Origin: Guillardia theta CCMP2712 | Lineage: Eukaryota; Protista; Cryptophyta | Direction: 5' to 3' | DNA: 64,000 nucleotides | NCBI RefSeq assembly: GCF_000315625.1 | Contig: NW_005434586.1 | Span: 168,759-232,758 of the forward strand | Shown: positions 53,926 through 56,800 of the stretch, one piece after another | Numbering within the stretch: position 1 is the stretch's first letter | How the letters are laid out: each line of letters begins with the position of its first letter | Program-made: the position numbers and the translations under genes | Notes under the pieces: generated by a model | The model's input: the letters and a program-made list of their open reading frames with translations, nothing else | What the model was told of the DNA's origin: nothing | The model's database searches: none

Positions 53926-56072
53926 ATGAACGGCAGCGGCAACCTTGGAAGACAGAACCCCCCTGGAGCGAAAAATTTTGGTAACTTGCAGCCTCCCAGA
54001 AATCCATTGCCCCAAGTGACACCACTGGATGTGACATCCAATCTCCCACAGCCGGAGGCAAACGGCTACCCTCCAGTTGTACCGGCTGATGCTGTGCCGG
54101 CTGCTGTTTTTGTACCTCCTGTTGTGCACGTTGTTGGGCAAGCCCCTAAGGAGATTCAAAATGCCCCAAGAGATCCGAGGAGCAATCCCCAGGCTGTTCA
54201 GCGAAGCAGGGATCCGCGCTTGAACGTGTCGACAGATCGGTCTCTTCCTGCTCCTGGCTCAAACTCACCTCGCTTTGATGGAAGGGAAAAGTCGCAGCCT
54301 TCGAAGCTTCATGTCAGGACAACCCAACAGTCTCCAACATCAAGTCCCAGGTTTCCTCAAGCCTACGCGCAACCTTCGCCTCTGCTCGCAAGTTCTCCAA
54401 GCATGCTTGGTCATGTACCTGGCTTTCCTCGCCCAGGAGAGGAGCATCGGACGCAACCGTTACCAAGACTAACGCACGACTCGTCGTTTGAAGCTTTTCT
54501 CAATGGCCAGAAGCGCAGAAAAGTTGTTGAGAAGACCTTCCATCGACTTTGTTGCTCTCCAGAGTTCATCGAACTCATAAGAGTGCTGAAGGAGTTGAAG
54601 GCAGCGACCATTAGCCTCCATCAAGAAAACATCATGCAGATGAAGTACGGGCTGACGCGGGGAGACATCGACTTCGAGTACGAGACGCTCTTGTCTTTGA
54701 AAGAGAACCTTGCTCACAAGAGCATGGCGTGGGAATATAACTTAGCAAAAGCCTGGCAGATCATCGGTAACACTTGCTTGTGCTGCTATGTGACAGCGGC
54801 TGATTGCTGTGATCCTTCAGGCAAACCCTTAACTTCTCTCGATGTAGCCAACTATCCTGATGAAGATATTGTAAGCACTCTCAATGTGGCGAACACTTCG
54901 GAGGTGATCAAAGGTTTCGTGTTCCTCGGTGCCGGTGGCCAGAAGAATGAGGAGGTGGAGAAACCTATCATGGTCTCGGAGATGTCGAAACAGTTTAGAG
55001 AAAGGAAGATGATTCTCCAGAAGTGGTATGACGACAACAGGATAAGATACATATTGAATCTTGCAAGTAAGAGCAGCCCTTCTCCGATCCGTTGCACGTA
55101 CTTGACAATTGACTTCCAGAGGATGAGCAGGGAATGGAAAAGATGAAGTATCCCTTTGAGTATGAAGAGGTTATTGACGGACCTCTTCAGTAGCCCTCAT
55201 CTAACAAGTGAACGACTGAGCAGGTTGAGCCGGAGACCTCAAGACCGGATCTTAGGACCATGCGCATTGAAAATGACGATGACGACGATGAGACGATTCG
55301 AGTCCTCCGCTTACCTATGAAAGATACTAATGAGTACGATGTGGAGAATTCCTGGGAGCTCTTCGAGGCGGCAAGGTGAGACCCCGGCTAGCGCTAAGTG
55401 ACTTTGGATTTGATGATGAGCAAGGTTTCTGGAGAGAGCGTGGAGAAGGCACAAGAAGTTTCTCATGAGATCTTTGAATGAGGAAATCCAGGGGAAAAGC
55501 AGACGGGAAAATTCCCCCAACCGTCCTGTGATGGTGATGATTCACTGCTACGGCGGGATCAACAGGAAACCTAGATCGAGGGTTGTCGTGGGGGTCTGAC
55601 GGGCTCGCCTCAGGTCTCCCTTAGCTCTGATCTACTGGTTGCTTCGATTTTGTTCTCATCGCAGCGTCGACCAAGGTTTCTCTTGTTGCTCCCCCGCACG
55701 CGGCTGACCGAACTCCAGACAACGTCATCGAGCGAGTCAAGCACAGGAGGCGAACGGCATTCAGGGAGTACCAGGTGATAGCTTCCCCTACAGGACCCTC
55801 CTGACCCCCTCACCTTTCAGGAAAAAAATCGTGGGTTGGAGACGGTCTTGAAGGACAAGGAAATATGGATGAGCGGCGTGAAGACAAGAATCGAGAAAGA
55901 GATCGCCTGCGAAACAGAAGCTCTACCCTTTGAGAGACATGTGGAGGACTATCTCAACCTCAAGCGACGATACGCCTGTAGAATCTCCCATGGCTCTCTA
56001 GGGATATTCGCTGTGGACTGCGGTGGTTTGCCCGGCTCGCCGATCTTCAGTGACGAGGAGGACCAGACTTAA
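53926..56072 (+). CDS. Atypical dual-specificity protein phosphatase with Pro-rich N-terminus
   Basis: SEVIKGFVFLG, IRYILNL, LPMKD, VMIHCYGGINR|SPLALIYWLL, VKHRR in the expected DSP order. Confidence 0.85.
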
Positions 56073-56099: not shown

Positions 56100-56800
56100 T
56101 GAGGCTAGCCTCCCGGAACCTCGGCGGGTGCCGGCGGCGAGCTGGGACCGCCGGGGCTGGGCCGGGTACTTATCGCCGGCCCGAGACCGTCGGACCGGTC
56201 TGAGTTCCAAACATTAGGAACGGTTTCAAGTTTGCACTCAACGATGCCCTGGTGATCTGATCCCGGGCCCCGCAGGACGGTCCGCCGCCGGGCGGAATTC
56301 CCGGCCGGGTCGCCCGCGCGGCTGCAACTTGAACTTGGAACTTGAACTTGGCCGGAGCCTTGAGTGTCCGAGGTGGGCCACGGTAGTACGGTCACCGTGT
56401 GACGGCGGCCGGCCCGGGGCCCAGTGGAGTCACCGCGTGACTTGACTCCGTGCGGTGACGCCCGGCCGTCCGATCATCGAGTCGATAGCGCCAATGATCA
56501 TTCCGGGCTCGCCAGTGCCCGGCAGGGGGCCAAGGGGGGGGAGGGGGGGGCGGTCGCTGGCGGCTCCGACAGCCCGGCTCGGCGCGGCGCACGGAGTCCG
56601 ATGAAAAGTAATAAAGAGAACTGATGATGAGCCCGCTGACGACGGACTGGAGCTGACCGTGCCTCGCCGACGGTCGGGTGCAGGGCCGGGCGGGCCGCCG
56701 GCCGCCGGGTCGGGGCCGGGCCGATGGCGCCGGGCCGCATCATGGCATCGGATGCTAGCCCGGCCGTAGTAGAAGTACAGCGCGGCCCTCTGGGTGCCAA
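56100..56800. promoter_or_regulatory. GC/CCGG-rich intergenic island upstream of ARPC2
   Basis: GC-rich with GAGTC/GACTC words; includes short AACTTG repeats. Confidence 0.45.

What the first reader, a model, noticed from the sequence alone, without database searches (positions are those of the whole stretch)
55540..55680. Apparently obligatory non-canonical GA-AG intron inside the phosphatase active-site loop
Seen: the exon ends CAC TGC TAC GGC GGG ATC AAC AG (HCYGGIN-R), followed by gaaacc...ctgac...ctcag (55566-55613, 48 nt, typical local size, with a CTGAC branch-like site), then G TCT CCC TTA GCT CTG ATC TAC TGG. Read-through hits TGA. All four internal GT dinucleotides (55582, 55585, 55588, 55594) are phase 0 and give the wrong frame. 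Only CAG|GA...AG restores the DSP signature HCxxGxxRS and the downstream LIYWLL...VKHRR frame. Established: GA-AG introns are known in a few lineages such as dinoflagellates and some copepods/tunicates. Inference: this spliceosome tolerates GA donors, which standard annotation would miss.
Basis: partly seen in the sequence, partly recalled or inferred. Interest (0 to 1): 0.75.

Follow-up and report, generated by a model that had tools for sequence, protein, structure and literature searches.

The report
Real GA-AG intron in algal phosphatase
In the alga Guillardia theta, a 48-base intron that starts with GA instead of the near-universal GT splits the catalytic loop of a dual-specificity phosphatase gene; RNA-derived protein shows it is removed exactly as proposed, and the public gene model drops the whole catalytic exon.

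Summary
The observation and the reading are both confirmed. The window is Guillardia theta CCMP2712, gene GUITHDRAFT_144546.

- **RNA evidence:** a transcript-derived ORF (MMETSP, P0002, 599 aa) matches every exon of the window at 100% and reads HCYGGINR|SPLALIYWLL. Exactly 48 nt (55566-55613) are missing from the mRNA.
- **Homology evidence:** about 30 distant relatives share HCxxGxNRSP..WWL across this junction, and the predicted fold matches solved dual-specificity phosphatases.
- **Boundaries:** no GT-AG excision keeps the frame. Of the five equivalent placements, only GA-AG has G at +1 and a terminal AG.
- **Intron character:** it looks like its six GT-AG neighbours in size (48 nt vs 43-54) and branch site (CTGAC, 14 nt from the 3' end). 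It pairs with U1 at 6 positions, against 5-7 for five of those neighbours. The AG|GAA context is the one reported for GA donors in Eurytemora and Oikopleura.
- **snRNAs:** U1 (three identical genes) and U6 are canonical. No U12 was found.
- **Public model:** XP_005825034 skips the 141-nt catalytic exon and keeps an ordinary intron as 18 residues.

The scan found GA-AG introns before on other DNA of this genome (s1-431645, s1-448785, s1-441273, s1-431776). Raw genomic reads at base 55567 could not be checked. I rate it a new member of a known kind, of moderate interest.

The parts
53926..56072 (+). Coding region of GUITHDRAFT_144546: eight exons, 1800 nt including the stop, 599 aa by the transcript-derived ORF P0002
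   Evidence: tblastn of P0002 onto the window, 100% identity in every exon. The exon lengths 841+246+50+152+141+62+56+252 sum to 1800.
54767..54820 (+). Intron 1, GT-AG, 54 nt. It is in frame and free of stops, and the NCBI model keeps it as 18 residues.
   Evidence: P0002 and the Hanusia orthologue P0003 read IIG|KPL, while P0001 carries 18 extra residues. Sequence.
55067..55119 (+). Intron 2, GT-AG, 53 nt
55170..55223 (+). Intron 3, GT-AG, 54 nt
55376..55424 (+). Intron 4, GT-AG, 49 nt, phase 2 (AG|G)
55425..55565 (+). Exon 5, 141 nt, the catalytic exon. It ends with ...VMVMIHCYGGIN and the first two bases of the Arg codon. The public model skips it.
   Evidence: Present in P0002 and P0003, absent from P0001.
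55566..55613 (+). Intron 5, the finding: 48 nt, donor CAG|GAAACC, CTGAC branch site with its A at 55599 (14 nt from the 3' end), acceptor CCTCAG|G, phase 2 inside the Arg codon of HCxxGxxR
   Evidence: A 16-codon gap at exactly this place in the tblastn alignment of P0002; boundary analysis; sequence.
55614..55675 (+). Exon 6, 62 nt. It supplies the third base of the Arg codon, the Ser of the signature and the helix SPLALIYWLLRFC.
   Evidence: Helix 477-490 in the model.
55676..55718 (+). Intron 6, GT-AG, 43 nt, CTGAC branch site 11 nt from the 3' end
55775..55820 (+). Intron 7, GT-AG, 46 nt, CTGAC branch site 16 nt from the 3' end

Best explanation
Window 55566-55613 is a genuine, efficiently used spliceosomal intron of the major (U2) type. 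Its 5' end is GA rather than GT. It lies in phase 2 inside the arginine codon of the HCxxGxxRS loop of a divergent dual-specificity phosphatase of Guillardia theta.

Shown: the 48 nt are absent from mRNA, and the joined reading is the one conserved across the family.

Inferred: the cut is made at CAG|GA...AG|G by the ordinary spliceosome. The U1 and U6 snRNAs of this genome are canonical, so the A at +2 is tolerated as a single mismatch. A perfect exon-side CAG and A at +3 and +4 probably offset it: the site makes 6 of 9 possible U1 pairs, as many as the GT donors next door. A strong CTGAC branch site and pyrimidine-rich acceptor in a very short intron probably help as well. Gene predictors that allow only GT or GC donors cannot see this donor, so the public model jumps from the previous donor to this intron's acceptor and deletes the catalytic exon.
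For: (1) P0002, a complete ORF from an MMETSP transcript, is 100% identical to the window in all exons and reads HCYGGINR|SPLALIYWLL. tblastn shows a gap of exactly 16 codons.
(2) Read-through hits TGA at 55597.
(3) No GT-AG excision keeps the frame. Of the five equivalent placements, only GA-AG has G at +1 and a terminal AG.
(4) The intron resembles its six GT-AG neighbours. Length is 48 nt vs 43-54. The CTGAC branch A is 14 nt from the 3' end vs 11 and 16 in the next two introns. It makes 6 U1 pairs vs 5-7 in introns 2-4, 6 and 7.
(5) In 34 relatives found by an exhaustive HMMER search, H470, C471, G474, R477, S478 and D413 are at least 90% conserved, and about 30 read (V/I)HCxxGxNRSPxxV(V/I)WWL across the junction.
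(6) The DSP assignment holds. Pfam DSPc scores over its cut-off in relatives P0004, P0011, P0012, P0014, P0016 and P0017. The AF2 model has pLDDT around 90 over residues 300-570 with strand 466-471, the P-loop and helix 477-490. All top Foldseek PDB hits are DUSPs, with TM by target 0.6-0.72.
(7) The locus is single-copy in the 87-Mb assembly.
(8) There are three identical U1 genes with the canonical 5' end AUACUUACCUG and no variant copy. U6 has a canonical ACAGAGA box.
(9) The AG|GA-A context equals the one reported for GA donors of Eurytemora and Oikopleura (PMC7072748).
Against: - The RNA evidence is at protein level only.
- Neither RNA nor protein can tell the five equivalent boundary placements apart.
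- The A at 55567 rests on the assembly alone. A T there would give a perfectly ordinary CAG|GTAACC donor.
- P0002 itself scores below Pfam's DSPc cut-off (24 vs 33.5 bits).
- The Hanusia phi orthologue's transcript departs from the family right after ...GGINR and lacks 28 residues. Splicing around this junction is therefore not uniform in cryptophytes.
Confidence: 0.85

Rival explanations
1. Assembly or base-calling error: the true base at 55567 is T and the intron is an ordinary GT-AG intron (CAG|GTAACC).
For: One substitution would make a good canonical donor. No raw reads or second assembly could be consulted. The locus is single-copy, so no paralogue gives a cross-check.
Against: The public predictor, working on the same assembly, did not use this donor, so the deposited sequence really reads GA. 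Earlier notes of this scan report the same AG|GAA-type donors at several unrelated loci of this genome, some with transcript support. I did not re-verify those notes. Random errors at one particular base of several donors, always T to A, would be unlikely.
Confidence: 0.07
2. The 48-nt gap is not made by the spliceosome at GA-AG. It is either a reverse-transcriptase template switch across the CAGG direct repeat, or an excision at one of the other four equivalent boundaries.
For: A 4-nt direct repeat (CAGG) flanks the removed stretch. Template switching is a known source of false non-canonical junctions, as discussed in PMC7072748.
Against: The excision is needed to avoid a stop. It recreates a motif and a following helix conserved in about 30 distant relatives. 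Size, branch site and acceptor match the neighbouring introns. AGG repeats at both ends are what the splice consensus produces anyway; intron 4 has GCAAGG at both ends. The stretch has no unusual secondary structure (z = 0.21). The assembled transcript carries a complete ORF.
Confidence: 0.04
3. It is a minor (U12-type) intron with unusual termini.
For: Minor-type introns have been scored in G. theta annotations (PMC11347168).
Against: The donor GAAACCTAG has no resemblance to RTATCCTT, and the branch region is CTGAC rather than TCCTTAAC. I found no U12 gene (a weak negative). [quoted passage not shown]
Confidence: 0.01
4. The locus is a decaying gene or pseudogene, and the spliced transcript is an incidental product.
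For: The Hanusia orthologue's transcript lacks the helix after the P-loop. P0002 is below the Pfam cut-off.
Against: The transcript carries a complete 599-aa ORF. All catalytic positions (D413, H470, C471, G474, R477, S478) are intact and conserved. The fold is predicted with confidence. Identity to Hanusia is 71%, with long invariant blocks.
Confidence: 0.03

Closest known systems
GA-AG introns of the copepod Eurytemora affinis and the tunicate Oikopleura dioica (PMC7072748)
   Same: The GA donor is flanked by exon-side AG and a following A (here CAG|GAA), the acceptor is a normal AG, and the introns are removed from mRNA. Oikopleura introns are also very short; that last point is from my own knowledge.
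   Different: Here the lineage is a cryptophyte alga. A U1 variant was proposed for Eurytemora, whereas G. theta has only three identical canonical U1 genes. I did not measure how frequent the class is in G. theta.
GA (and GC) donors of dinoflagellates such as Symbiodinium (PMC5100056, PMC5177918)
   Same: There is a G at +1, a non-T base at +2 and an AG acceptor followed by G (here AG|G). Gene models fail unless predictors are modified.
   Different: In dinoflagellates these donors are abundant (up to 65 per gene, PMC5100056). Their introns are longer, and the genomes have many other oddities. Here it is 1 of the 7 introns of this gene.
GA-AG intron of human FGFR genes (described in PMC7072748, citing earlier work)
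   Same: A single, efficiently spliced GA-AG intron in an otherwise canonical gene.
   Different: The human case is said to depend on a canonical donor 6 nt upstream. Here the nearest upstream GT is 31 nt away, and the nearest downstream GT is 16 nt inside the intron.
Dual-specificity phosphatases (Pfam PF00782; MKP5/DUSP10, DUSP22, DUSP23, PTPMT1 structures)
   Same: The HCxxGxxRS P-loop, an upstream conserved Asp, a strand-loop-helix core, and Foldseek TM-scores of 0.6-0.72 by target.
   Different: This is a divergent subfamily with the signature HCxxGxNRSP..WWL, a long helix (423-451) inserted before the catalytic strand, a helical N-terminal region (about 186-300), and a disordered Pro-rich first 185 residues. 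P0002 itself scores below the Pfam cut-off.

Membership tests
Spliceosomal GA-AG intron (U2-type, non-canonical donor) | The stretch is absent from mature mRNA at exactly these boundaries | tested here: met
   The transcript-derived ORF P0002 matches all exons at 100% with a 16-codon gap at 55566-55613. This is protein-level evidence only.
Spliceosomal GA-AG intron (U2-type, non-canonical donor) | G at +1, A at +2 and a terminal AG, with no canonical alternative | tested here: met
   The sequence. No GT-AG excision keeps the frame, and GA-AG is the only spliceosome-like placement of the five equivalent ones.
Spliceosomal GA-AG intron (U2-type, non-canonical donor) | The A at +2 is real in genomic DNA | not testable with these tools
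   Only the assembly was available. The locus is single-copy.
Spliceosomal GA-AG intron (U2-type, non-canonical donor) | Branch site, acceptor and length are like local U2-type introns | tested here: met
   CTGAC 14 nt from the 3' end, a YAG acceptor, 48 nt vs 43-54 nt in the six neighbours.
Spliceosomal GA-AG intron (U2-type, non-canonical donor) | AG|GA-A flanking context reported for GA donors | tested here: met
   CAG|GAAACC, compared with PMC7072748.
Spliceosomal GA-AG intron (U2-type, non-canonical donor) | Lariat formation and dependence on the spliceosome | not testable with these tools
   This needs RNA work.
U12-type (minor) intron | RTATCCTT donor and TCCTTAAC branch box | tested here: not met
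   The donor is GAAACCTAG and the branch is CTGAC.
U12-type (minor) intron | Minor-spliceosome snRNAs are present in the genome | tested here: inconclusive
   No U12 match, but the search's control genomes cannot validate a negative. PMC11347168 also reports none.
Structured non-conventional introns (euglenid type) | A stable helix that brings the intron ends together | tested here: not met
   MFE -21.4 kcal/mol vs a shuffle mean of -22.0, z = 0.21.
Dual-specificity phosphatase, PF00782 | HCxxGxxR(S/T) signature with an upstream acid Asp | tested here: met
   H470, C471, G474, R477, S478 and D413 are at least 90% conserved in 34 relatives.
Dual-specificity phosphatase, PF00782 | Pfam score over the curated cut-off | tested here: inconclusive
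   P0002 scores 24.0 bits against a cut-off of 33.5. Relatives P0004, P0011, P0012, P0014, P0016 and P0017 score 35.9-47.9 bits. Single exons give no hit.
Dual-specificity phosphatase, PF00782 | DSP fold | tested here: met
   The AF2 model has pLDDT around 90 over residues 300-570. The top 50 Foldseek PDB hits are nearly all DUSP, PTPMT1 or Cdc14 chains, with probability 1.00. All ESM-atlas neighbours that carry a Pfam family are DSPc or PTP.
Dual-specificity phosphatase, PF00782 | Cys-dependent phosphatase activity | not testable with these tools
   This needs an enzyme assay.

The most novel reading that the evidence does not exclude
Guillardia theta carries a systematic class of short GA-AG introns with an AG|GAA donor context, spliced by a fully canonical U1/U6 machinery. 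That would make cryptophytes a further independent lineage with relaxed +2 recognition, after dinoflagellates, Oikopleura and a copepod. Here the weak donor borders the catalytic exon, so exon skipping around it could yield catalytically dead isoforms. Two observations fit that idea: the skipped-exon public model, and the Hanusia transcript that lacks 28 residues right after the same junction.
Probability: 0.35. Interest if true: 0.6.

Novelty: new member of a known kind. Interest (0 to 1): 0.45.

Why it matters
GA-AG introns are a known but rare exception to the GT-AG rule. I found no paper that reports them for cryptophytes or for G. theta.

The practical consequence is concrete. The reference protein XP_005825034 / EKX38054 lacks its whole catalytic exon, matches no protein family, and is copied into UniRef and EukProt. 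Any genome-wide count of phosphatases, or of other families, in this model alga inherits such errors wherever a GA donor occurs.

G. theta's U1 and U6 are canonical, so it would also be a clean system for asking how a normal spliceosome accepts A at +2.

Tried and rejected
- **Transcript nucleotides.** A protein-pattern scan and an exon-5 DNA pattern scan of metagenome contigs both found nothing. The junction is therefore documented at protein level only.
- **Exon-by-exon Pfam scans by reference.** No DSP hit, because the exons are too short.
- **First structure prediction.** With only two sequences the model was useless (pLDDT 36). It was replaced by one built on 34 sequences.
- **Sequence searches of the PDB.** Only marginal PTP hits.
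- **Sequence-only census of GA donors in the window**, using branch motif, AG, open flanks and stops inside. It gave pure noise: GT was not even enriched among the 16 dinucleotides. I dropped it and draw no frequency from it.
- **Re-finding the PP2A-type GA-AG intron of note s1-431776.** Among 30 PF00149 loci of the genome I found no interrupted GDxVDRG motif, so that note is not independently verified here.
- **Paralogues with the same intron position.** There are none. P0004 and P0005 match only this gene.
- **A U1 variant that could pair with A at +2.** None exists; there are three identical canonical copies.
- **A hairpin that brings the intron ends together.** None.
- **Joined sequences.** I sent no spliced model joined by me to any search tool. 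The only full-length spliced sequence I used is the database protein P0002. In scripts I joined short flanks only, to compare junction placements and to test a motif.

Full report
**What is there.** The window is part of Guillardia theta CCMP2712 (G000:C88:168759-232758, an 87.1-Mb assembly). A word search with the long first exon returned three proteins:
- the NCBI model of this very gene, GUITHDRAFT_144546 (P0001, XP_005825034, 570 aa);
- a complete ORF predicted from an MMETSP transcript (P0002, Transcript_23228, 599 aa);
- the orthologue from a Hanusia phi transcriptome (P0003, 569 aa).

The exon reads HCYGGIN and then AG. Read-through gives RKPRSRVVVGV and a TGA at 55597. The frame that starts at 55615 reads SPLALIYWLLRFCSHRS.

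**Is the 48-nt stretch removed?** Yes. tblastn of P0002 onto the window gives 100% identity in every exon. Its single gap in this region is exactly 16 codons, between ...HCYGGIN and RSPLALIYWLL. The eight exons defined this way sum to 1800 nt, which is 599 codons plus the stop.

The seven introns are:

| Intron | Window coordinates | Ends | Length |
|---|---|---|---|
| 1 | 54767-54820 | GT-AG | 54 nt |
| 2 | 55067-55119 | GT-AG | 53 nt |
| 3 | 55170-55223 | GT-AG | 54 nt |
| 4 | 55376-55424 | GT-AG | 49 nt |
| 5 | 55566-55613 | GA-AG | 48 nt |
| 6 | 55676-55718 | GT-AG | 43 nt |
| 7 | 55775-55820 | GT-AG | 46 nt |

.

I sent no spliced model of my own to any search tool. Exons were scanned one by one by reference, and the full-length analyses used the database protein P0002.

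**Where exactly are the boundaries?** An exhaustive list of excisions that keep both reading frames open contains no GT-AG pair. The only GC-AG pairs (55547 or 55553 to 55624) would delete the catalytic Cys or Gly codons, and they contradict P0002.

CAGG occurs at both ends (55563-55566 and 55611-55614). Five placements of the 48-nt excision therefore give the same mRNA: CA-CT, AG-TC, GG-CA, GA-AG and AA-GG. Only GA-AG has the invariant G at +1 and the AG acceptor. This step is an inference. Such end repeats are the normal by-product of the AG|G...AG|G consensus; intron 4 has GCAAGG at both ends.

**Does it look like a local spliceosomal intron?** Apart from +2, it does.
- Its length (48 nt) lies within the 43-54 nt range of its neighbours.
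- It has a CTGAC branch motif with the A 14 nt from the 3' end. Introns 6 and 7 have CTGAC at 11 and 16 nt.
- Its acceptor is CCTCAG|G.
- The donor CAG|GAAACC can make 6 of 9 pairs with the U1 5' end (-3 to +1, +3 and +4), against 5-7 for the GT donors of introns 2-4, 6 and 7. Donors in this gene are loosely conserved beyond GT, for example GTTATT and GTTTCT.
- The stretch has no unusual secondary structure (z = 0.21). That speaks against euglenid-type structured introns and gives no support to a template-switch artefact.

**The machinery.** The genome holds exactly three U1 genes, tandem and identical, with the canonical 5' end AUACUUACCUG. No variant copy could pair with A at +2. The one U6 gene found has the canonical ACAGAGA box. 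No U12 was found (a weak negative), and a published survey likewise found no minor-spliceosome snRNAs in this species (PMC11347168). The donor does not resemble a U12-type donor. The likeliest mechanism is therefore the ordinary major spliceosome tolerating one mismatch at +2. This is inferred, not shown.

**Is the host gene a phosphatase, and does the junction matter?** P0002 hits Pfam DSPc only below the cut-off (24 bits, E = 3.7e-5). The public model P0001 and the Hanusia protein hit nothing. Because the word search and the family scans left the family open, I ran the exhaustive HMMER search.

- It found 35 relatives. Several carry DSPc above the cut-off: P0004, P0011, P0012, P0014, P0016 and P0017, at 35.9-47.9 bits.
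- In the 34-sequence alignment A2, the positions conserved at 90% or more are L359, N360, Y373, D413, H470, C471, G474, R477 and S478.
- About 30 relatives read (V/I)HCxxGxNRSPxxV(V/I)WWL straight across the position of the intron. Homology, independently of the transcript, thus demands the spliced reading.
- With this alignment, AlphaFold2 gives pLDDT of about 90 over residues 300-570. It shows strand 466-471, the P-loop and helix 477-490.
- Foldseek finds almost only dual-specificity phosphatases: MKP5, DUSP1, DUSP22, DUSP23, DUSP5 and PTPMT1, with TM by target 0.6-0.72 and probability 1.00.
- A language-model neighbour search agrees.

The intron thus splits the Arg codon of HCxxGxxRS, between the P-loop and its helix.

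**The public model.** P0001 is 570 aa, which is 599 + 18 - 47. It keeps the in-frame canonical intron 1 as 18 residues. It also joins the donor of intron 4 to the acceptor of the GA-AG intron, reading FEAAR|SPLAL, which removes the 141-nt catalytic exon. Only genome-derived sources hold that sequence. The collection holds no RNA-derived protein with the skipped exon.

**Hanusia phi.** Its transcript agrees up to ...HCFGGINR and then lacks 28 residues (84 nt, in frame) before rejoining. This fits use of a donor at the same position together with skipping of an 84-nt exon. Without a genome for that species, this stays a guess.

**What remains open.**
- The A at 55567 rests on the assembly. A T would make an ordinary donor. 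The locus is single-copy and has no paralogue to compare.
- I could not measure how common GA donors are. A sequence-only census was pure noise.

Earlier notes of this scan report GA-AG introns with AG|GAA-type donors at other loci of this genome, several with transcript support (s1-431645, s1-448785, s1-441273, s1-431776). These are leads that agree with my result. I did not check them.

[quoted passage not shown] They are also abundant in Symbiodinium (PMC5100056; PMC5177918). They occur at low frequency elsewhere. I found no paper that reports them in cryptophytes.

This is a confirmed new member of a known kind. It is of moderate interest, and its clear practical consequence is a reference protein that lacks its catalytic exon.

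Noticed in passing
window 54767-54820: An ordinary GT-AG intron of 54 nt, in frame and without stops. The NCBI model P0001 translates it as 18 extra residues. The transcript ORF P0002 and the Hanusia orthologue both lack them.
   Followed up: yes
P0003 (Hanusia phi), residues 463-472 versus window 55614-55740: The orthologous transcript departs from the family exactly after ...GGINR and lacks 28 residues, the helix that follows the P-loop. The gap is in frame (84 nt). It may be skipping of an exon next to the same donor position.
   Followed up: partly
G000:C2:80288-84087 (L002-L004): Three identical U1 snRNA genes in tandem, about 1.7-1.9 kb apart. These are the only U1 copies in the assembly.
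   Followed up: yes
window 56100-56700: A GC-rich stretch just downstream of the gene. It contains a short ACTTGAACTTGG-type repeat (about 56325-56350) and a G run (about 56530-56550). It was not analysed.
   Followed up: no
P0002 residues 186-300 and alignment A2: The phosphatase belongs to an unnamed DSP subfamily with the signature HCxxGxNRSP..WWL. It has a long helix inserted before the catalytic strand and a helical N-terminal region. One relative (P0013) carries a sub-threshold RRM match (19.8 bits against a cut-off of 20.7). The substrate is unknown.
   Followed up: partly
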